Position numbers and translations under genes: made by a program. This document shows, piece by piece, positions 3-45,623 of a stretch of DNA of 64,000 nt. How positions within the stretch are numbered: position 1 is the stretch's first letter; each line of letters starts with the position of its first letter. The notes under the pieces were generated by a model, which ran no database searches, was not told the origin of the DNA, and was given only the letters and a program-made list of their open reading frames with translations. Location of the stretch: positions 124,001-188,000 of IMG/VR virus record IMGVR_UViG_3300043418_000114; one strand, written 5' to 3'.

Positions 3-260
3 TTCTATAAGATCGTTATCAATAATCAAACTAAAGAGATTGCTGGTTGGGGATTCCCTCACGTTGAGCCATATCCTAACTTAGGTAATGACTTAACTAA
101 GTTCCGTGTTCCAGTTGCGACCCTAATGCAACAGGCCGGAGTTCAATATGCATTCCCACAAGGAGCAATCGAACTACAGCCTGGCAAAGAGTGGGCAGTT
201 GACTTTGGCGCACTCACTAAAGCAAAACGCACCAAATGTGGCGCGAATGCAGAAGATTAA
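3..260 (+). CDS. C-terminal fragment of a probable DNA/RNA non-specific endonuclease (5' truncated by window edge)
   Basis: Open frame FYKIVINNQTKEIAGWGFPHVEPYPNLGNDLTKFRVPV...AED* resembles the C-terminal half of NUC/EndoG-type nucleases; the catalytic His region is outside the window. Confidence 0.5.
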   Translation, partial: FYKIVINNQTKEIAGWGFPHVEPYPNLGNDLTKFRVPVATLMQQAGVQYAFPQGAIELQPGKEWAVDFGALTKAKRTKCGANAED

Positions 261-985
261 TTCTTAGTATAAACGAAGTACAATCTATCGTTGGCATCTT
301 TCTTGAAGGTGTCTAGCGTAAGATTGTACTTTTCAGCAAACTCATTCACGACTTCAAAACTCCAAGGGAAGATATCAACGTAGGGACCTGTCTTATGTGA
401 GATGCCTGGATTAGCACGTAGATAAAACTTGCCACCCTTCTTTAAGAGATTGACACAATGCTCAAATCGTGCTTCAATCTCATCCTTGCTATTAAAGTTA
501 ATTGATCCAAGAGCCAGAATTACATCATGTGATTCTGGTTTTACTTTATACTCAAGAATATCAACTTCATAGTCGGCTTGATTGTTATATGGGTCGATAC
601 CAATTAAGTTTTGAATGCGGCCCTTGAATGGGTGATAGCCACAGCCAACATCAAGTACCTTCTCTGGGTTTAGTTTGTTAACTTCATCAGCAAGCTCCCA
701 CCCTGTATGCTCATAGTCACCTGTGCGTGGCTTCCAAATCTCTCCAAAGAAGCGCAGGATATATCGTTCGCTCAAATCATCGACGATATCTTTCAATGTA
801 CCTACGTATTCGCATGGCAAGCTCAATTCGGCCTCTACAGCGTCTTTGAATTTGCGATAACGTGCAGGTGTCCATGGTAAGTCTTGCACAACGGTGTTTT
901 CGTCAATGGAAATCTTTGCATACTTTGGTAAATTAAACGCAAGTTTCAAATTTTCGCTAACTAGTTTAAAAATTTTAGTGTTCAT
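257..985 (-). CDS. Class I SAM-dependent methyltransferase with N-terminal acyl-carrier-protein-like domain
   Basis: VLDVGCG motif I, LIGID, DVILALGSINF, LLKKGGKFY; start moved to MNTKIF (985), downstream of a late promoter. Confidence 0.75.
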   Translation of the reverse strand: MNTKIFKLVSENLKLAFNLPKYAKISIDENTVVQDLPWTPARYRKFKDAVEAELSLPCEYVGTLKDIVDDLSERYILRFFGEIWKPRTGDYEHTGWELADEVNKLNPEKVLDVGCGYHPFKGRIQNLIGIDPYNNQADYEVDILEYKVKPESHDVILALGSINFNSKDEIEARFEHCVNLLKKGGKFYLRANPGISHKTGPYVDIFPWSFEVVNEFAEKYNLTLDTFKKDANDRLYFVYTKN

Positions 986-1024
986 AGTAATTTTTTCTAA
1001 AAAATATAAATTTCTTGGAAATTG

Positions 1025-1052
1025 TATAAATATTCTTGTCGTCATATTTATA
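1025..1052. promoter_or_regulatory. Divergent pair of T4-like late promoters
   Basis: TATAAATA on + at 1025-1032 and on - at 1052-1045, between divergent genes. Confidence 0.7.
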
Positions 1053-1064
1053 TTAGGAGGAACG

Positions 1065-2045
1065 ATGAAAAAACTTTTAGCAACACTCACACTAGTTATA
1101 TTACCTTTGTTCGCATTCGCATGGGAACCATCTAAGCCGGTGACTGTTATTGTGGGTAACACACCTGGAGCAGGCAACGAAATCGCATTTAGGAAACTAG
1201 CAGAGATTGTGCAGAAACAAAACCCAAAGTTTGTTTATGTCGTACAAAACATTCCAGGTGCTGATTCTGTGGTAGCAAATAATAAGGTACTAGATGCTCC
1301 GACTGACGGCTATACAATCAATTTGCCAAGTCATATGAGTTCATACGTGACTAATGATATTTGGGAAAAGAAAGTTAAAAAGTATCAATGGGATAGTTTC
1401 ATCGACGTACTTACAATGGGTAAGAGTCCTCTGGTATTGGTCGCTAGTACAAAAAGTAATGTTAACACGCCAATCGACTTCATTAGATATCTGCATACTT
1501 CTACAAAGCCGATTAATATCGCAGTAGGTGGTGGAGCACACAGAACAGCATATGAGTATTTGATGGAATCTGCACATGGTGACAAGAATCTAATCACCCA
1601 CGTGAAGTTCAATGGTCCGATGCCAGCAGTGTCGAGCGTAGCACAATATGATGGTAAGACGGGTACAGAGTTCGGTATCATACCAATTGCAGTTGCTCGT
1701 TCGTTGATTGATGCAGGTAAAGTTAAACCTATCGGATTCACTGGCACAAGACACATGCCGCAATACCCAGATGTTCCGTTATTGAACACAGTAGCACCTG
1801 GGATTAACGTGTATGCCGCATGGTCAATTCAACTGCCACCTAACACTAACAAAGAGATTGTAGATTGGTATCAAAAAGCATTTAGTACCGCAGTACGTAG
1901 TAAAGAATATGCAGAATGGTGCAAATTAAATGTAGTGTTCTATTCAGAAGACGAATTGACTCCGGTTGGTCTAAAGAAACACATGCAAGAATTACGCACA
2001 ACGTTCTTACCTGTACTAAGTAAGATAGACTTATCTAAGGAATAA
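1065..2045 (+). CDS. tctC: Bug/TctC tripartite tricarboxylate transporter substrate-binding protein
   Basis: Signal peptide, WEPSKPVTVIVGNTPGAG, VQNIPGA, APTDGYT, PQYPDVP; AGGAGG RBS before ATG 1065. Confidence 0.85.
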   Translation: MKKLLATLTLVILPLFAFAWEPSKPVTVIVGNTPGAGNEIAFRKLAEIVQKQNPKFVYVVQNIPGADSVVANNKVLDAPTDGYTINLPSHMSSYVTNDIWEKKVKKYQWDSFIDVLTMGKSPLVLVASTKSNVNTPIDFIRYLHTSTKPINIAVGGGAHRTAYEYLMESAHGDKNLITHVKFNGPMPAVSSVAQYDGKTGTEFGIIPIAVARSLIDAGKVKPIGFTGTRHMPQYPDVPLLNTVAPGINVYAAWSIQLPPNTNKEIVDWYQKAFSTAVRSKEYAEWCKLNVVFYSEDELTPVGLKKHMQELRTTFLPVLSKIDLSKE

Positions 2046-2047
2046 AA

Positions 2048-2674
2048 TTGAAGTATATCTTTGTAGCTGGTGCTCCAGGCAGTAAATGGAGCAGTGTCGT
2101 AAAGAACATTTATTATAGTCCTAGTATTGACCACAGTGATTATAGTGATGAACGTACTTACTATCACGATGCTAGTGGTGAAATGCAGTTAATGCATTTA
2201 GGTGCATATTTTGATCCAGGAATGGAATTCTCGTTACCAGAATCAATGTCAACACTTACAAAGGCGCAAGCAGAAGAAAGATTTGATGCACCATTTTCAG
2301 GCGAAGGTGTTCGCATCATCAAGAGTCACATCTTTTGTTATCAAGAGAATATCGAGTACTTACGTGAGTTGTGGCCTGAATGCCCAATCGTAACTGTGCT
2401 TAGACCTAATGACAGTTGTTTAGGATGGTGGGTACGATGTGGTCATTTCGACATTACATATCCCATCTACGAGCCTTACTACAAAGACTTAAAGACAATG
2501 GCTAAAATCATTGACAAGCAAAACTATGAACTTGAAGAATGTACGTTTAGAAACAAAGCAACCAGAGTTTACAACAACACTAGACTTGCAATGATTCTCG
2601 GCATCCAATCGCCACCTGATGAATATCGCCACAGCTACATTGACAATGATATCACAGTAAGCGTAATACTATGA
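2048..2674 (+). CDS. Sulfotransferase-fold / P-loop-like protein
   Basis: N-terminal IFVAGAPGSKWSS loop, IIKSH and PIVTVLR segments as in sulfotransferase-like proteins. Confidence 0.45.
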   Translation: MKYIFVAGAPGSKWSSVVKNIYYSPSIDHSDYSDERTYYHDASGEMQLMHLGAYFDPGMEFSLPESMSTLTKAQAEERFDAPFSGEGVRIIKSHIFCYQENIEYLRELWPECPIVTVLRPNDSCLGWWVRCGHFDITYPIYEPYYKDLKTMAKIIDKQNYELEECTFRNKATRVYNNTRLAMILGIQSPPDEYRHSYIDNDITVSVIL

Positions 2675-3303
2675 AACAAATGTTAATCATTACCGGGCCA
2701 CAAGGGTCTGGTAATCACGTTTTCAGCAAAATCTTTGCGTTACATAACGAAGTATATGGCTGGAAAGACTTACTTAATGAATATTGGATAGCACATGATT
2801 ATGAACCATTTAGTGATTGTTGGGATATGCCTAGCTTACTTAATAGCATTGACTGGACAAACATGGATAATTACGTCACTAGTATCAGTTGCCCATATGC
2901 AAACGAAGGAGTGGCTACAATCCCTCGGTACAAAGATTTCATCAGTGCATTAACTCAACTTGGTATCACTGTTAAAGTCTGTATCATTGGTAGAGACCAA
3001 ACTATCCTTAGACACCAGCAACAAAGAGTAAGAGATAGACACAGTTTACCTGATTTCGAAGGTGAACTAGAATTTTTAAATTCACTAGAGCCAATATATC
3101 TAAGTACAGAGTTGTTATATTTGTACAAAGACTATTATTTAAAGAGTTTGAGTAAAATCTTAGACTTCCCTATAGCATATGATGACCCTAGAGTGTTTGA
3201 AATATTGAAACAAGATGCAAACGAGAAATACTTTCAGAGTATTCCTCAACAAGAGTTAGACAAAACAGTCCGCAAAGTTAGCGGACTAAAGGAAAAAGAA
3301 TGA
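2671..3303 (+). CDS. Sulfotransferase-fold / P-loop-like protein
   Basis: LIITGPQGSGNH loop and VCIIGRD segment; ATGA-coupled to upstream gene. Confidence 0.45.
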   Translation: MKQMLIITGPQGSGNHVFSKIFALHNEVYGWKDLLNEYWIAHDYEPFSDCWDMPSLLNSIDWTNMDNYVTSISCPYANEGVATIPRYKDFISALTQLGITVKVCIIGRDQTILRHQQQRVRDRHSLPDFEGELEFLNSLEPIYLSTELLYLYKDYYLKSLSKILDFPIAYDDPRVFEILKQDANEKYFQSIPQQELDKTVRKVSGLKEKE

Positions 3304-3992
3304 TTAGTAACTGGGAAACAACAAAAGCAAAAAGCAAATATCACTTTGATAATTTTAAGAATGATCCAACCATGGACAAAGTTGAAGTATTAGGGCGAAT
3401 TACAGGCGACTGGTCGCATGAAGTACAGGATATTATTGCTAACAGCAAACCTGCAACTTGGGAAACACGTGGATACAAAGGCGAAGGTGTTATGCCACCA
3501 CGTGAAGATTTGATTGCAGAAGAATACGACTTAGAGAAAACTGGTTACGGAAAAGACCACCAGATAACACACTTAAACTGGAATGTTCCAGACAAGTTAA
3601 AAAAGATTACTGAAATGTTTGGTCTAGATGACTGCATGGAACGTATTCACGTGCAGATGCCAGGCGAAGTTTGGAATCTTCATATCGACAAACTAAACAA
3701 ATGGTGCCCAGAAGAACCATGGAAAGTAATGCGTGTTATGATTCACTTGACTGATTGGGAACAAGGTCACTTCTGGTCGTATGGCAATCACGTTCATACG
3801 CAATGGCATGCAGGTGATGTTACTACATTTGATTGGCAAAACTTGCCTCATTCTACTGCTAATGCAGGACATAATCCACGTGTTACGTTTCAGTTAACTG
3901 GTGTTGTAACACCCAAAACGCTTGATTTTCTTGCTAGGCTAAAACGGTTTAACACGATACAATTAGAGTACAAAAATGAGTCTTGGTTCTAA
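3300..3992 (+). CDS. 2OG-Fe(II) oxygenase (Asp/Asn beta-hydroxylase-like double-stranded beta-helix)
   Basis: HxD (LHIDK), distal His (PHSTAN) and Arg (PRVTFQ) in typical spacing. Confidence 0.7.
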   Translation: MISNWETTKAKSKYHFDNFKNDPTMDKVEVLGRITGDWSHEVQDIIANSKPATWETRGYKGEGVMPPREDLIAEEYDLEKTGYGKDHQITHLNWNVPDKLKKITEMFGLDDCMERIHVQMPGEVWNLHIDKLNKWCPEEPWKVMRVMIHLTDWEQGHFWSYGNHVHTQWHAGDVTTFDWQNLPHSTANAGHNPRVTFQLTGVVTPKTLDFLARLKRFNTIQLEYKNESWF

Positions 3993-4419
3993 ACGTATAT
4001 TAATCATGGGTCTTCCTGGTTCAGGTAAGACTACCCTAGCGGACGCACTGGAAGAACGGTTCAATTTACGTAACAAAAAGGTTATTAGGTTGAATGCTGA
4101 TAAGATACGTGAAGAATACGATGACTGGGATTTTACTACTGAGGGTAGATTGCGTCAAAGTAAGCGTATGTGTGAATTAGCTAGTAGAATCGAATGTGAC
4201 TATGTTATAGCTGATTTTGTGTGTCCACTTGTGGAAATGCGTAATAATTTTGCTCCAGACCATCTTATATGGATGGACACCATCAGATCCAGTGAATATG
4301 AAGACACTAATCAAATGTTTGTTCGACCAGAGAAGTGCACCTTCAGATTGATAGAAAAAGATGCTAAAAAATGGAGTGAGTACCTGGCGATAAATATAAT
4401 AAAGCTAGATAGCTTGTAA
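3976..4419 (+). CDS. Adenylyl-sulfate (APS) kinase-like protein
   Basis: Walker A GLPGSGKTT, LNADKIRE, DWDFTTEGRLRQ, VIADFVCP: CysC-like. Confidence 0.7.
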   Translation: MSLGSKRILIMGLPGSGKTTLADALEERFNLRNKKVIRLNADKIREEYDDWDFTTEGRLRQSKRMCELASRIECDYVIADFVCPLVEMRNNFAPDHLIWMDTIRSSEYEDTNQMFVRPEKCTFRLIEKDAKKWSEYLAINIIKLDSL

Positions 4420-4521
4420 GAACCCACCTTAGGGCCCGTTGTCGTAACGGTTAGAGCAATGCTCAGGCGTCCGCGCTAATGAACTGCACCGCGTAGTGTG
4501 CCCCGTATAAAGTAAGCGGGA
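4402..4521 (+). ncRNA. Candidate structured small RNA (no family assigned)
   Basis: 57 G+C in 4421-4520 by hand count; several stems; bracketed by ATAAATA at 4390 and 4524. Confidence 0.5.
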
Positions 4522-4534
4522 TGATAAATACATA

Positions 4535-5113
4535 ATGCGTTCCTATCAAATCATAAACGAGTCCCCTGCTACCGAATTGGCCAAGAAATTGCCATCTCTC
4601 CAAAAGCACGACTATGACACCATCGATACCCTGATGCGTAAAATCTCACAGCGTCATCGTATAACTGGTAAGCACTTACATGACTTGTTTGTTAAGCAAT
4701 ATGGAAAAACTCCAGATAACTGGATCAAAGACGATCTATCTGAAGGTGATTCTTCGGAATTAGACATTGATGCGGAAGTTCAGAAGTTTATCAAATGGGC
4801 CGCAAGACGCCTACATCTACAAACTACACCACATATTGAACTGAGCCAAGATACCAAAGACGCACAGGACAATCATCACACAGGACTACATCGTACTGAC
4901 ACTGGTGAAATCTGGATTTACGTAAAGAATCGCAATTTAGTTGATATCTTGCGTACTGTGTTTCATGAGTTGGTACATCATCGTCAAGGTGAGTTAAAGA
5001 TGATTAAGCCAGGTGATAGCTATCCTGGTAGTCCAATCGAAGCAATGGCAGACATGTTGGCTGGTAAATACATCAAGATTTACGGCGAACAAAACCATCA
5101 CATCTTCCAGTAA
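4535..5113 (+). CDS. Late protein with HExxH zinc-metallopeptidase-like motif
   Basis: RTVFHELVHHRQ; ATAAATA at 4524-4530; N-terminus MRSYQIINE. Confidence 0.55.
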   Translation: MRSYQIINESPATELAKKLPSLQKHDYDTIDTLMRKISQRHRITGKHLHDLFVKQYGKTPDNWIKDDLSEGDSSELDIDAEVQKFIKWAARRLHLQTTPHIELSQDTKDAQDNHHTGLHRTDTGEIWIYVKNRNLVDILRTVFHELVHHRQGELKMIKPGDSYPGSPIEAMADMLAGKYIKIYGEQNHHIFQ

Positions 5114-44517: not shown

Positions 44518-44955
44518 ATGACAAAAACTTTATCCCTTCGTTCCCTCGACATTCCGTCAATCCACAAATTTGGTATCGGCTTCGATAACATGTTTGATGA
44601 ATTAATGCGAATGAATGCTCAACAATCCCTTAACTATCCTCCATACAACATTCTCAAGAATACCGATGATTCATTCGATATTCAAGTGGCTGTTTCTGGC
44701 TTTAGTGAAGGTGAGATTGAGGTCAATCTTGACAATCGAGTATTGACTATCAAGGGTCAGAAGGCGGAAGATGTAGTTGCTGAATATCTGCATAAAGGTA
44801 TCAGTACACGTGATTTCGTGCGTGAGTTCACTCTAGCCGAACACGTTGAGGTAATCAATGCCTCACAAAAAGATGGTATTTTGACTATTCAACTAGAACG
44901 CATCGTTCCAGAAGAAAAGAAACCGAAAAATATCCAGATATCTTATTCTAAATAA
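44518..44955 (+). CDS. hsp20: Small heat shock protein (Hsp20/IbpA-like)
   Basis: IGFDNMF, NYPPYNI, AVSGF, YLHKGIS.R.F, DGILTI.LER.VPEEKKP. Confidence 0.95.
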
Positions 44956-45623
44956 GAATTGCATTTTTCAAAATGCCATCGTCGCATTCCTGGGGTAGCT
45001 CCAGATTTGCCACAATGCGGACAGGTAATCATGATTGAATTAGGATTAACATTCTTTTGAAAATTATGATTACCTTCTCGAACTAGCTCACGCGCCCGTA
45101 CTGATTCTTGGTTATATGTTCGACCACTTGATCTGATTCCAATACTAATATTTTTTCGATGTTGATCCGTCTTGAATCCTTTATAATTATCTTTGTTGGA
45201 TTTAGGGCCTTGTAATTTTCGGATAAACTCTGGATTTTTAACTTTCGCTTGATTTGCTAATTTAATTTTATTTGCATGATCTACTGATTTTGGACCTCTG
45301 AGTTTTTCTCTCGTTTCCAATGAATGCTTATGGCCAGTAGTTCCCTCTCCACCATCGGTTTGATTTCTTAGTATACCTGTCATGTTGTCCTTGCGACCAT
45401 ACCATCTTATCATGCGTCTTTCCAACGCAAAAGCTCCAATTTCAGATAGTGATTGTTCCATGATGATAATTCTACATTCATCTACTGGCAAATTTATGCA
45501 ATGATTTTTGTGCCATGCCCTACCATTAAATCCCTTTCCGATATAGTACGGCGTACCATCGTCGCGCAAATATGCGTAAACATAGAACCCAATCGGTGGA
45601 TTCTTTTTTGAATAAATAGTCAT
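44943..45623 (-). mobile_element. Free-standing GIY-YIG-like homing endonuclease gene with NUMOD-type repeats
   Basis: [45 protein letters not shown]-terminal CPHCG; antisense insertion with its own late promoter. Confidence 0.8.

What the first reader, a model, noticed from the sequence alone, without database searches (positions are those of the whole stretch)
257..4419. Late tailoring cluster: carrier-like methyltransferase, two sulfotransferase-fold proteins, 2OG oxygenase, APS kinase and a Bug binding protein
Seen: six genes share a divergent late-promoter pair (1025-1052), and the + genes are tightly coupled. Known: APS kinase makes PAPS, the donor used by sulfotransferases; 2OG oxygenases and SAM methyltransferases are tailoring enzymes. 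Inference: the phage carries its own PAPS supply and a hydroxylate-sulfate-methylate line for one substrate (virion glycan, host surface polymer, DNA or small molecule). I know of no described phage pathway with this gene set.
Basis: partly seen in the sequence, partly recalled or inferred. Interest (0 to 1): 0.7.

Follow-up and report, generated by a model that had tools for sequence, protein, structure and literature searches.

The report
Freshwater jumbo-phage import-and-sulfation gene module
An uncultured freshwater jumbo phage carries a conserved, apparently transcribed block of genes (a solute-binding transport protein, two minimal sulfotransferase-like enzymes, an iron/2-oxoglutarate oxygenase, an APS-kinase-like enzyme and a divergently transcribed methyltransferase) that most likely sulfates and hydroxylates an unknown substrate during infection, a pathway not yet described for phages.

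Summary
Six genes sit at the stated coordinates, and the five + strand genes abut or overlap. Two inverted TATAAATA boxes lie in the 79-nt divergent spacer.

- **ST_A and ST_B:** both P-loop-like ORFs model confidently and resemble sulfotransferases best (TPST, CurM/OLS). Neither has a Walker-A GK[ST], so they are not ordinary nucleotide kinases. Their PAPS-binding motifs are non-canonical.
- **OXY:** it has an invariant HxD...H...R set typical of 2OG oxygenases, nearest the Asp/Asn beta-hydroxylase type.
- **KIN:** it is a truncated, divergent APS-kinase-family protein. Most copies found in relatives are fused or adjacent to a NadM-like nucleotidyltransferase.
- **PAPS supply:** the genome has no ATP sulfurylase, so "own PAPS supply" covers at most the last step.

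In 80 related viral contigs ST_A and OXY co-occur in 79, with MT and a transport component in most. The transporter varies: TctC, TctA plus TctC, or an SSF symporter. ST_B is present in about half and KIN in about a third.

A freshwater metatranscriptome holds identical contigs over all six genes. The substrate is unknown. Published papers have noted phage sulfotransferase and cysC genes individually, but I found no description of this module.

The parts
257..985 (-). MT: class I SAM-dependent methyltransferase with an extra N-terminal region of about 70 aa. It is transcribed divergently from the + operon.
   Evidence: Pfam matches to Methyltransf_25/11/23 are weak and below cut-off. Atlas neighbours are AdoMet-MTase clusters, and class I MTase models align to residues from about 70 to 242. 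Motif I VLDVGCG is invariant in 24 relatives, with 75% mean column identity. The gene is present in 63 of 80 related loci. A shorter form is kept next to TctC/ST_A at 32-34% identity.
228..245 (-). Terminator-like hairpin with a T-run just downstream of MT.
   Evidence: Consensus scan only.
1025..1032 (+). TATAAATA box (T4-late-type, NATAAATA class) 33 nt upstream of the TctC start codon.
   Evidence: ATAAATA is enriched about 7-fold in sense orientation upstream of genes genome-wide. The box is partly conserved in relatives. An RNA contig starts at 1052.
1045..1052 (-). TATAAATA box on the minus strand, 60 nt upstream of the MT start codon.
   Evidence: An RNA contig covering the MT 5' part ends at 1028.
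1065..2045 (+). TctC/Bug-family periplasmic solute-binding protein with an N-terminal signal peptide (hydrophobic core, then FAFA|WEP).
   Evidence: PF03401 E 2.7e-19, 70 bits against a cut-off of 27. It is the only TctC in the genome, and the genome has no TctA. The signal-peptide-like N-terminus is conserved in relatives. In relatives this slot holds TctC, TctA plus a divergent TctC, or an SSF symporter.
2048..2674 (+). ST_A: minimal (208 aa) sulfotransferase-fold protein and core gene of the module.
   Evidence: AF2 model pLDDT 87.5. An exhaustive structural search ranks five sulfotransferases first: TPST1 Z 11.4, tick TPST 11.0, TPST2 10.9, OLS ST 9.9 and 3rnl 9.2. The best kinase scores 9.1. 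14 of 26 family members match PF13469 weakly and none matches a kinase family. Invariant motifs are GAPGSKWSS, K92-S-H94 and R119..D122. The family has 3752 homologs, almost all without annotation.
2671..3303 (+). ST_B: second minimal (210 aa) sulfotransferase-fold protein. It is not detectably homologous to ST_A at sequence level.
   Evidence: AF2 model pLDDT 92.3. The top nine structural matches are all sulfotransferases: CurM/OLS ST Z 12.0-12.1 and TPST 11.4. Foldseek gives TPST1 at E 2.5e-4. Atlas feature and shape neighbours are sulfotransferase clusters. Invariant motifs are GPQG-x-GNH, S73-x-P75 and R108...Q116..R119 (D109 in 90% or more). It is present in 39 of 80 loci at varying positions. 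hhalign against ST_A is not significant.
3300..3992 (+). OXY: Fe(II)/2-oxoglutarate oxygenase-like protein, nearest the Asp/Asn beta-hydroxylase (cupin) type.
   Evidence: H128-x-D130...H184...R194 is invariant across a family alignment of 24% mean identity. The family has 1079 representatives at 50% identity. Atlas neighbours carry PF05118, and one bacterial cluster fuses Sulfotransfer_3 with Asp_Arg_Hydrox. 3 of 34 family members match PF05118 weakly. The window's protein has no Pfam or PDB sequence match. It co-occurs with ST_A in 79 of 80 loci.
3976..4419 (+). KIN: short (147 aa) APS-kinase-family P-loop kinase.
   Evidence: PF01583 44.7 bits against a cut-off of 21.1, but only profile positions 4-91 of 152 align. 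It falls below the NCBIfam cut-offs. With the family profile, the best 21 PDB matches are all APS kinases or APS-kinase domains, best 8.8e-14; the next family, PSTK, scores 8.8e-6. Its motifs LNAD, DF[ST]xEGR and DFVxP correspond to LDGD, GFSxEDR and SFISP of APS kinases. 13 of 18 aligned relatives carry a C-terminal NadM-like nucleotidyltransferase domain. It is present in 25 of 80 loci.

Best explanation
The region is a conserved accessory operon of a widespread, uncultured clade of freshwater jumbo phages related to Rak2/Atu_ph07.

**Proposed working.**
- Transcription starts from NATAAATA-type promoters and runs divergently.
- The + transcript encodes a secreted TctC-type binding protein. 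It would plug into the host's TctAB permease to capture an anionic solute.
- It also encodes two minimal PAPS-type sulfotransferases (ST_A, ST_B) and an Fe(II)/2OG hydroxylase (OXY). These would hydroxylate and O-sulfate a substrate.
- An APS-kinase-like enzyme (KIN) converts host-made APS to PAPS, so that the sulfate donor is not limiting.
- The divergently transcribed SAM methyltransferase probably acts on the same substrate or product.

**Shown here.** Gene content, folds, conserved residues, conserved clustering and coupling, and presence of the region in an RNA library.

**Inferred.** Sulfotransfer activity, APS as the kinase substrate, the order of steps, and the substrate's identity. 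Candidate substrates are an imported small carboxylate or amino-acid derivative, or alternatively a peptide or protein. The second option arises because the best structural analogues (TPST, Asp/Asn hydroxylase) modify proteins.
For: - **Folds.** ST_A and ST_B models are confident and rank sulfotransferases first.
- **Sequence families.** ST_A family members hit only Sulfotransfer_3 among Pfam families, never kinase families.
- **No kinase P-loop.** Neither protein has a Walker-A GK[ST].
- **KIN.** Its family profile picks out APS kinases about 8 orders of magnitude ahead of any other kinase family, and keeps the catalytic Asp, the Phe and the Arg residues of the APS site.
- **OXY.** It keeps an invariant 2-His-1-carboxylate triad plus Arg.
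- **Independent link.** A bacterial protein cluster fuses Sulfotransfer_3 with Asp_Arg_Hydrox, which links the two activities outside phages.
- **Clustering.** ST_A co-occurs with OXY in 79 of 80 loci, mostly with 4-nt overlaps.
- **Rearranged relatives.** The set stays together when the order is scrambled. L075 reads ST_B(-), MT(-), OXY, an SSF transporter, KIN, NT, ST_A.
- **Deep divergence.** MT, TctC and ST_A stay adjacent at 32-53% identity.
- **Transporter slot.** A transport component sits next to ST_A in 67 of 80 loci despite changing family.
- **Transcription.** RNA-library contigs cover all six genes.
Against: - The PAPS-binding motifs are non-canonical. The basic residue at position 2 of the 5'-PSB loop is Gly in ST_A and Gln in ST_B.
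- Neither window protein reaches any Pfam sulfotransferase threshold.
- In AlphaFold/Swiss-Prot the top ST_A matches are NMP and shikimate kinases.
- Z-score margins over kinases are only about 2 units.
- KIN lacks the C-terminal lid region of APS kinases and fails the NCBIfam equivalog cut-offs.
- KIN and ST_B are dispensable in many relatives.
- No ATP sulfurylase is present.
- The neighbourhood is also a variable island that takes up unrelated genes: endonucleases, GATase, PP-loop ATPase and GDSL lipase. Adjacency alone may therefore overstate functional linkage.
- The relatives are fairly close (polymerase 71-89% identical), so much of the synteny is inherited.
- No substrate is identified.
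Confidence: 0.45

Rival explanations
1. The genes are not one pathway. The region is a hyperplastic accessory island next to the replication module. It collects independent auxiliary genes: TctC for nutrient or carboxylate scavenging, a cysC-like kinase to boost host sulfate assimilation, and oxygenase, sulfotransferase-like and methyltransferase genes with separate targets.
For: - Gene content between MT and the DNA polymerase varies among relatives. Insertions include an endonuclease, GATase/Peptidase_C26, a PP-loop ATPase, a GDSL lipase and GIY-YIG homing endonucleases.
- KIN occurs in only 25 of 80 loci and ST_B in 39 of 80.
- cysC in large freshwater phages has been read as an assimilatory sulfate-reduction gene (bioRxiv 10.1101/2020.02.13.942896).
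- Phage-encoded periplasmic binding proteins as stand-alone AMGs are established (cyanophage PstS; my own knowledge).
Against: - The TctC/ST_A and ST_A/OXY junctions keep 4-nt overlaps.
- The set re-clusters after rearrangement and at deep divergence.
- A transporter of changing family always occupies the slot next to ST_A.
- A cysC without cysH, cysD or cysN in the phage gives PAPS. PAPS is of little use for assimilation if the host reduces APS directly.
Confidence: 0.3
2. The 'sulfotransferase-like' proteins and the kinase handle a different 3'-phosphoadenylylated or adenylylated compound, not PAPS. In relatives, an APS-kinase-like domain fused to a NadM/PPAT-like nucleotidyltransferase would adenylylate a phospho-compound. 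It would then phosphorylate the adenosine ribose, with CoA-like or NAD(P)-like logic. ST_A and ST_B would then bind or transfer from that product, or act as degenerate NMP-kinase-like proteins.
For: - The C-terminal domain of the long KIN forms carries the GRWQPWHxGH and ISATxIR motifs. Its best matches are NadM NMN adenylyltransferase (2qjt, E 2.5e-3 alone, 3.4e-5 with the profile) and PPAT.
- In L075 the kinase and the NT are separate adjacent genes next to an SSF symporter, the family that includes pantothenate and proline carriers (family content from my own knowledge).
- The ST_A loop resembles an NMP-kinase P-loop with one residue missing, and Swiss-Prot AlphaFold matches are kinases.
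Against: - The kinase profile is specific for APS kinases, and dephospho-CoA kinase or NR kinase families do not appear among its matches.
- ST_A family members hit Sulfotransfer_3 but no kinase family.
- The best structural matches of both ST proteins are sulfotransferases.
- The window's genome already has a separate NadM-Nudix gene for NAD salvage.
- The window's own KIN lacks the NT domain.
Confidence: 0.15
3. The enzymes modify a phage macromolecule, either virion protein or glycan or the phage DNA, rather than a small molecule. The aim would be protection from host defences or altered adsorption.
For: - The promoters are T4-late-type boxes.
- The best structural analogues of ST_A and OXY are protein-modifying enzymes: tyrosylprotein sulfotransferase and Asp/Asn beta-hydroxylase.
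- The cluster lies beside the DNA replication genes.
- Phage DNA hypermodification pathways use P-loop kinases and 2OG oxygenases (my own knowledge).
Against: - A periplasmic binding protein or membrane transporter is an integral, conserved member, which fits small-molecule traffic.
- MT is not of a DNA-methyltransferase family.
- OXY shows no TET/JBP signal.
- No glycosyltransferase is linked.
- The NATAAATA motif also precedes a nucleotide-metabolism gene, so 'late' is unproven.
Confidence: 0.1

Closest known systems
Dedicated PAPS-supply plus sulfotransferase cassettes of bacteria, e.g. rhizobial NodP/NodQ (ATP sulfurylase/APS kinase) with NodH sulfotransferase for Nod-factor sulfation (my own knowledge, not tested here)
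   Same: An APS-kinase-family gene is placed beside sulfotransferase genes, so a tailoring reaction has its own donor supply.
   Different: There is no ATP sulfurylase in the phage. The kinase is truncated. The sulfotransferases are minimal 208-210 aa proteins with non-canonical PAPS motifs. The module is phage-borne and is joined to an oxygenase, a methyltransferase and a transporter.
Tyrosylprotein sulfotransferases (TPST1/2; Sulfotransfer_3 clan) and the activating sulfotransferase domains of CurM and olefin synthase
   Same: They are the best structural matches. ST_A scores Z 11.4-11.5 against TPST. ST_B scores Z 12.0-12.1 against CurM/OLS ST and 11.4 against TPST.
   Different: Sequence identity is only 10-14%. 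About 160-166 of 270-330 residues align. The phage proteins lack the substrate-binding inserts. The basic residue of the 5'-PSB loop is displaced in ST_A and absent in ST_B.
APS kinase (CysC; PF01583) and the APS-kinase domain of bifunctional PAPS synthases
   Same: The P-loop, the catalytic Asp of the DGD motif, and the FSxxxR and SFISP-like motifs are kept. The family profile matches APS kinases specifically. The domain order kinase-N / nucleotidyltransferase-C in relatives mirrors animal PAPS synthase (domain order of animal PAPS synthase from my own knowledge).
   Different: KIN has 147 aa against about 175-210. Only the first 90 residues or so align, and the lid region is replaced. It falls below the NCBIfam cut-offs. 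The fused domain in relatives is NadM/PPAT-like, not an ATP sulfurylase.
Asp/Asn beta-hydroxylase family (PF05118; includes LpxO-type lipid hydroxylases) and bacterial Sulfotransfer_3 + Asp_Arg_Hydrox fusion proteins
   Same: The HxD...H...R set is present. Atlas feature and shape neighbours carry PF05118. The bacterial fusion shows the same two activities linked in cells.
   Different: The window's protein has no significant Pfam or PDB sequence match. I produced no structural model of OXY itself.
Previously reported phage auxiliary genes: cysC in large freshwater phages (bioRxiv 10.1101/2020.02.13.942896), PF13469 sulfotransferases and 2OG oxygenases in OM43 phages and cyanophages (PMC10580990), and cyanophage PstS binding protein (my own knowledge)
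   Same: The same enzyme classes have been noticed one by one in aquatic phages. A phage-encoded periplasmic binding protein has precedent.
   Different: Those reports treat the genes singly and state that the role of phage sulfotransferases is unclear. The conserved operon of transporter, two sulfotransferases, oxygenase and kinase (with or without NT) is not described in the papers I could search. GenBank phages hold no close homolog of ST_A or OXY.

Membership tests
PAPS-dependent sulfotransferase superfamily (Sulfotransfer_1/_3) - ST_A and ST_B | Sulfotransferase alpha/beta fold as the closest structural neighbour | tested here: met
   ST_A: in an exhaustive search of 48,161 chains, the top five are sulfotransferases (Z 11.4-9.2) and the best kinase scores 9.1. 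ST_B: the top nine are all sulfotransferases, with Z up to 12.1. Caveat: Swiss-Prot AlphaFold matches for ST_A are kinases.
PAPS-dependent sulfotransferase superfamily - ST_A and ST_B | 5'-phosphosulfate-binding loop (strand-loop-helix, P-[KR]-S-G-T-T type) | tested here: inconclusive
   The strand-loop-helix is present in both models, with invariant loops GAPGSKWSS and GPQG-x-GNH. The ST_A loop has the same length as the sulfotransferase loop. The canonical basic residue at position 2 is Gly in ST_A and Gln in ST_B. I made no superposition with bound PAP.
PAPS-dependent sulfotransferase superfamily - ST_A and ST_B | 3'-phosphate-binding motif (Arg at the end of a strand, followed by a helix) | tested here: inconclusive
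   R119 in ST_A (strand 114-118, helix 121-130) and R108 in ST_B (strand 100-107, helix 110-121) are invariant. The Ser of the canonical motif is not conserved.
PAPS-dependent sulfotransferase superfamily - ST_A and ST_B | Pfam model match above the curated threshold | tested here: not met
   Neither window protein matches. 14 of 26 ST_A relatives match PF13469 weakly, best E 1.7e-5. No ST_B relative matches.
PAPS-dependent sulfotransferase superfamily - ST_A and ST_B | Sulfate transfer from PAPS to an acceptor | not testable with these tools
   This needs a biochemical assay.
   ST_A has G-A-P-G-S-K-W-S, which is one residue short and has Lys followed by Trp. ST_B has G-P-Q-G-S-G-N-H, with Asn in place of Lys. 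Both loops are invariant in their families. Neither family matches any kinase Pfam family.
APS kinase (CysC) - KIN | Family HMM match | tested here: inconclusive
   PF01583 scores 44.7 bits against a cut-off of 21.1 but covers only positions 4-91 of 152. NCBIfam scores are 41-44 bits against cut-offs of 127-139. With the family profile, the best 21 PDB matches are all APS kinases, best 8.8e-14.
APS kinase (CysC) - KIN | Catalytic and APS-binding residues (DGD Asp, FSxxxR, second Arg, SFISP) | tested here: met
   LNAD keeps the second Asp. F53, R45, R58 and R64 are invariant, and DFVxP replaces SFISP. The first Asp of DGD is Asn.
APS kinase (CysC) - KIN | C-terminal lid region and full domain length | tested here: not met
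   KIN has 147 aa and nothing aligns beyond about residue 94.
Complete PAPS supply (ATP sulfurylase plus APS kinase) | Sat-type or CysD-type sulfate adenylyltransferase in the genome | tested here: not met
   PF01747 and PF01507 are absent from the complete 364-kb genome, and the positive controls gave matches.
Fe(II)/2OG oxygenase, Asp/Asn beta-hydroxylase-like - OXY | HxD/E...H iron triad and a 2OG-binding Arg | tested here: met
   H128, D130, H184 and R194 are invariant in an alignment of 34 sequences with 24% mean identity.
Fe(II)/2OG oxygenase, Asp/Asn beta-hydroxylase-like - OXY | PF05118 match or a demonstrated double-stranded beta-helix fold | tested here: inconclusive
   The window protein has no Pfam match, and 3 of 34 relatives match weakly at 2.6e-4. 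The Atlas shape search used a neighbour's model, not this protein. Both structure-prediction jobs had gone to ST_A and ST_B.
TctC/Bug solute-binding protein of tripartite tricarboxylate transporters | PF03401 match, signal peptide, and a partner TctA/TctB permease | tested here: met
   PF03401 scores 70 bits against a cut-off of 27. The signal-peptide-like N-terminus is conserved. No TctA is present in this genome, so a host permease is required. Seven relatives carry their own TctA.
Class I SAM-dependent methyltransferase - MT | Rossmann-like MTase domain with the glycine-rich motif I | tested here: met
   VLDVGCG is invariant. Atlas neighbours and shape matches are class I MTases. Pfam matches are below cut-off at 20 bits against 27. 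Substrate class is unknown.
T4-type late promoter | TATAAATA box upstream of the gene, with late gp55-dependent transcription | tested here: inconclusive
   The boxes are present and the NATAAATA class is enriched upstream of genes. Ends of RNA contigs flank the boxes. Timing and sigma-factor dependence were not tested.

The most novel reading that the evidence does not exclude
This clade of freshwater jumbo phages encodes a self-contained, transporter-coupled sulfation pathway. In its full form it would include a new kind of miniature PAPS synthase: an APS-kinase domain fused to a NadM-derived nucleotidyltransferase that adenylylates sulfate. It would also include two of the smallest known sulfotransferases and a hydroxylase. 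Together these would convert an imported solute, or a peptide, into a sulfated product during infection. That would be the first phage-made sulfated metabolite or sulfated protein.
Probability: 0.15. Interest if true: 0.85.

Novelty: new variant of a known kind. Interest (0 to 1): 0.62.

Why it matters
Sulfotransferase-like and cysC-like genes turn up repeatedly in aquatic phage genomes, and the literature says their role is unknown (PMC10580990). This study places them in a conserved, translationally coupled operon that appears transcribed in situ. That operon also holds an oxygenase, a methyltransferase and an uptake component.

- **Scale.** The gene families are very common in metagenomes: thousands of homologs for ST_A (3752) and ST_B (2814), and 1079 50%-identity cluster representatives for OXY.
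- **A testable hypothesis.** These jumbo phages may run a PAPS-dependent tailoring pathway.
- **Concrete reagents.** Four small soluble proteins and one binding protein are available for expression. The ligand of the binding protein would point to the substrate.
- **If confirmed.** Sulfation would join the list of phage-driven metabolic reprogramming. The work would define two new minimal sulfotransferase families and possibly a new route to PAPS.

Tried and rejected
- **Sequence searches against solved structures.** Searches with ST_A, ST_B and OXY, as single proteins and as family profiles, gave only chance-level matches.
- **ST_A against ST_B.** hhalign found no significant homology, so they are not recent paralogs.
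- **GenBank phages.** There was no nucleotide match to the region. ST_A matched only two marine single-cell virus contigs at 30% identity, and OXY matched nothing.
- **ST_A/OXY complex prediction.** It scored 0.00, which the tool reports as no answer, so I do not use it either way.
- **TATAAATA as the general late promoter.** I rejected the full 8-mer because it occurs at chance frequency (17 per genome). The 7-mer NATAAATA class is the enriched motif.
- **'Carrier-like' N-terminus of MT.** It has no PP-binding match and is absent from diverged relatives.
- **Host inference from TctC.** The only 'bacterial genome' matches were contigs in Haliscomenobacter and Flavobacterium MAGs. These contigs carry the phage module themselves (two of them only its MT/TctC/ST_A part), so they are probably mis-binned phage DNA and not host evidence.
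- **The spacer 4420-4534.** I checked it for tRNA, Rfam families and stable structure, and found none.
- **A remnant of the nucleotidyltransferase domain downstream of KIN.** None was found. The only NT-like genes in the genome are elsewhere.
- **Ordinary nucleotide kinases for ST_A/ST_B.** Rejected on P-loop residues and family matches.

Full report
**Where the window lies.** The window is bases 124,001-188,000 of a 364,247-bp viral record with direct terminal repeats, rated complete. Its DNA polymerase is 43-48% identical to those of the jumbo phages Phosso, Atu_ph07, XaC1 and RaK2. No GenBank phage matches the region at nucleotide level. Sequencing runs that hold the region are mostly freshwater metagenomes. 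This is therefore an uncultured freshwater jumbo phage.

**The observation.**
- ORF listing gives the six genes at the stated coordinates. MT lies on the minus strand at 257-985. TctC (1065-2045), ST_A (2048-2674), ST_B (2671-3303), OXY (3300-3992) and KIN (3976-4419) lie on the plus strand. Their junctions are a 2-nt gap, two 4-nt overlaps and a 17-nt overlap.
- The 79-nt spacer holds TATAAATA on the + strand at 1025-1032 and on the - strand at 1045-1052, with a Shine-Dalgarno AGGAGG before the TctC start.
- The exact 8-mer occurs at chance frequency in the window and in the genome.
- The 7-mer ATAAATA occurs 49 times in sense orientation within 100 nt upstream of crude gene calls. That compares with 8 antisense and 6.8 expected, and GATAAATA is the main form.
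- Related phages often keep two inverted (N)ATAAATA boxes in the same spacer.
- The pair is thus a credible promoter pair of the T4-late type. Late timing is not shown, and the same motif precedes a dCMP deaminase gene.
- A freshwater metatranscriptome run holds 100%-identical contigs over parts of all six genes. Their depth is very uneven, and a gap at 1029-1051 lies between the boxes. The DNA run has flat depth. This points to transcription in nature, although DNA carry-over cannot be formally excluded.

**The genes one by one.**
- **TctC.** It is a clear member of the TctC/Bug binding-protein family (PF03401, E 2.7e-19). It has a signal-peptide-like N-terminus that is conserved in relatives. 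The genome has no TctA permease.
- **MT.** It is a class I SAM methyltransferase. Motif I is invariant, Atlas neighbours are MTases, and Pfam matches are below cut-off. An N-terminal extension of about 70 residues has no carrier-protein signal and is missing in diverged relatives.
- **ST_A.**
  - It has no Pfam match itself, but 14 of 26 relatives match Sulfotransfer_3 weakly and none matches a kinase family.
  - Its AF2 model is confident (pLDDT 87.5).
  - In an exhaustive structural search the five best chains are sulfotransferases (TPST1 Z 11.4). The first kinase scores 9.1.
  - Swiss-Prot AlphaFold models give kinases first, while the ESM Atlas shape search gives sulfotransferase clusters.
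- **ST_B.** Its model is better still (pLDDT 92.3). The nine best structural matches are all sulfotransferases, led by CurM/olefin-synthase ST at Z 12.1. The Atlas agrees.
- **Shared features of ST_A and ST_B.**
  - Both have an N-terminal strand-loop-helix with an invariant loop (GAPGSKWSS; GPQG-x-GNH).
  - Both have an invariant Arg at a later strand-helix junction (R119; R108). These are the positions of the 5'-PSB and 3'-PB motifs.
  - The canonical basic residue of the first loop is displaced or missing.
  - ST_A also has an invariant K-S-H after a strand, like the K-x-H of cytosolic sulfotransferases (comparison from my own knowledge).
- Neither protein has a Walker-A Lys-Ser/Thr.
  - ST_A and ST_B are not detectably homologous to each other.
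- **OXY.**
  - It matches nothing in Pfam or PDB by sequence.
  - H128-x-D130, H184 and R194 are invariant in a family alignment of only 24% mean identity.
  - Atlas neighbours carry the Asp/Asn beta-hydroxylase domain, and 3 of 34 relatives match it weakly.
  - One Atlas neighbour is a bacterial cluster of 603-aa proteins that fuse Sulfotransfer_3 with Asp_Arg_Hydrox. This is an independent hint that the two activities work together.
- **KIN.**
  - It passes the Pfam APS-kinase threshold but only over its first 90 residues, and it fails the NCBIfam equivalog cut-offs.
  - A family profile finds APS kinases as its 21 best solved relatives, best at 8.8e-14. The next family follows at 8.8e-6.
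  - The catalytic Asp, the Phe and the Arg residues of the APS site are kept, but the lid region is not.

**What the relatives add.**
- Eighty viral contigs carrying an ST_A homolog (59-93% identity) were fetched. Within them OXY is present in 79, MT in 63, TctC in 60, ST_B in 39 and KIN in 25. Many absences are due to contig ends.
- The commonest orders are MT(-) TctC ST_A OXY, and the same followed by ST_B and KIN. In the window, ST_B instead lies between ST_A and OXY.
- Junctions are mostly 4-nt overlaps.
- The slot upstream of ST_A always holds a transport component, but of varying kind. It is TctC in 57 loci, TctA plus a divergent TctC in 7, and a sodium:solute symporter in 2.
- In the most diverged viral loci (L054, L075; OXY 29-30% identical) the order is scrambled, yet ST_B, MT, OXY, transporter, KIN and ST_A remain within 6.5 kb.
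- Three contigs filed under Haliscomenobacter and Flavobacterium MAGs carry the module or its MT/TctC/ST_A part, with MT at 32-34% identity in two of them. They are probably mis-binned phage DNA.
- This persistence through rearrangement argues for functional linkage of at least MT, the transporter, ST_A and OXY.
- Against this, the same neighbourhood also accepts unrelated genes: endonucleases, a GATase/Peptidase_C26, a PP-loop ATPase and a GDSL lipase.

**The kinase in relatives.**
- In 13 of 18 aligned relatives the kinase is 262-285 aa long. It ends in a nucleotidyltransferase domain with the motifs GRWQPWHxGH and ISATxIR.
- The closest solved relative of that domain is NadM-type NMN adenylyltransferase.
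- In L075 the two domains are separate adjacent genes.
- The window's genome has the short kinase only. It has a separate NadM-Nudix gene elsewhere, and no ATP sulfurylase or PAPS-reductase-family gene.
- The phage can therefore at most convert host APS to PAPS.
- Whether the fused domain in relatives adenylylates sulfate (a miniature PAPS synthase) or another phospho-compound is open.

**Most likely working.**
- I think the operon is a PAPS-dependent tailoring module. A captured or cellular substrate is hydroxylated by OXY and O-sulfated by ST_A and/or ST_B. KIN tops up PAPS, and MT adds a methyl group. My confidence is about 0.45.
- The folds, residues, clustering and RNA presence are shown. 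The chemistry and the substrate are inferred.
- The main rival is that this is a variable island of independent auxiliary genes (0.3).
- A second rival is that the kinase, with or without NT, and the ST-like proteins handle another adenylylated cofactor (0.15).
- A third rival is that the target is the virion or the DNA (0.1).

**Comparison with what is known.**
- Papers in the searchable library mention cysC in large freshwater phages as a sulfate-assimilation gene and in Lake Baikal viromes.
- They also mention PF13469 sulfotransferases and 2OG oxygenases in OM43 phages and cyanophages. One states explicitly that the function of phage sulfotransferases is unclear.
- None describes this operon.
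- The nearest cellular analogues are dedicated PAPS-supply plus sulfotransferase cassettes such as NodPQ/NodH, recalled from my own knowledge.
- The module is best rated as a new variant of a known kind: known enzyme superfamilies, in highly diverged minimal forms, assembled into a phage operon together with an uptake component.

Noticed in passing
L028:9885-10685, L080:9917-10717 and 11 other related loci; L075:6510-7357: In most relatives that have it, the APS-kinase-like protein is fused to a NadM/PPAT-like nucleotidyltransferase domain of about 120 aa (GRWQPWHxGH ... ISATxIR). In L075 and L054 the two are separate adjacent genes. The fusion order (kinase N-terminal) mirrors animal PAPS synthase, but the second domain is not an ATP sulfurylase.
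   Followed up: partly
window 4420-4534: A 115-nt G+C-rich non-coding spacer lies between KIN and the next gene. A 38-nt piece (4417-4454) also sits on a separate low-depth contig with different flanks in the DNA run X1. I found no tRNA, no Rfam match and no unusual folding energy.
   Followed up: partly
window 4535-5113: The gene after the cluster encodes a 192-aa protein with an HELVHH (HExxH-type) motif. It has a weak Tox-MPTase3 match and matches phrog_10346. It shows the highest depth in the RNA library (about 37), and a GATAAATA box lies only 4 nt before its ATG.
   Followed up: no
whole genome G000; window 4390, 4524, 16604(-), 39569, 44146, 58160: The phage's over-represented upstream motif is NATAAATA with G preferred (GATAAATA: 29 sense-upstream copies against 3.2 expected). 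It is not the T4 consensus TATAAATA.
   Followed up: partly
L071:5486-8001, L023, L027, L070, L073, L078, L079: Seven related phages encode their own TctA large permease plus a divergent TctC directly upstream of ST_A. Phage-borne membrane components of a tripartite tricarboxylate transporter are unusual.
   Followed up: partly
L087:7053-7628 and L088:3522-4097: In some relatives a Peptidase_C26/class I glutamine amidotransferase gene lies between TctC and ST_A, overlapping both neighbours. This hints at gamma-glutamyl or amide chemistry on the same substrate.
   Followed up: no
L089, L090 (NZ_JBBAKG010000036.1, NZ_JBBAKG010000049.1) and L091 (JBBALV010000052.1): Contigs of 62 kb, 43 kb and 6 kb filed in Haliscomenobacter and Flavobacterium MAGs carry the phage module (L090) or its MT/TctC/ST_A part. 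They are therefore probably phage contigs mis-binned into bacterial genomes.
   Followed up: partly
L091:3924-5197: Next to the diverged MT/ST_A/TctC trio lie a ferredoxin-reductase-like flavoprotein and a PNP_UDP_1 phosphorylase-superfamily protein (177 aa). A nucleoside-cleaving role that clears methyltransferase by-product would be one speculative reading. ST_A in this contig appears split into two frames.
   Followed up: no
G000:C1:36357-37376 (L082:1507-2526); G000:C1:12026-12295 and 245313-245570: Elsewhere the genome encodes a NadM-Nudix bifunctional protein for NAD salvage. It also encodes two further Asp/Asn beta-hydroxylase-like proteins, one of them above the Pfam cut-off.
   Followed up: no
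L075:7357-8004; window 44943-45623 (-): Homing endonuclease genes occur in two places. A GIY-YIG/NUMOD3 gene is inserted inside the module of a relative, between NT and ST_A. A homing-endonuclease-like gene with an upstream TATAAATA lies in the window.
   Followed up: no
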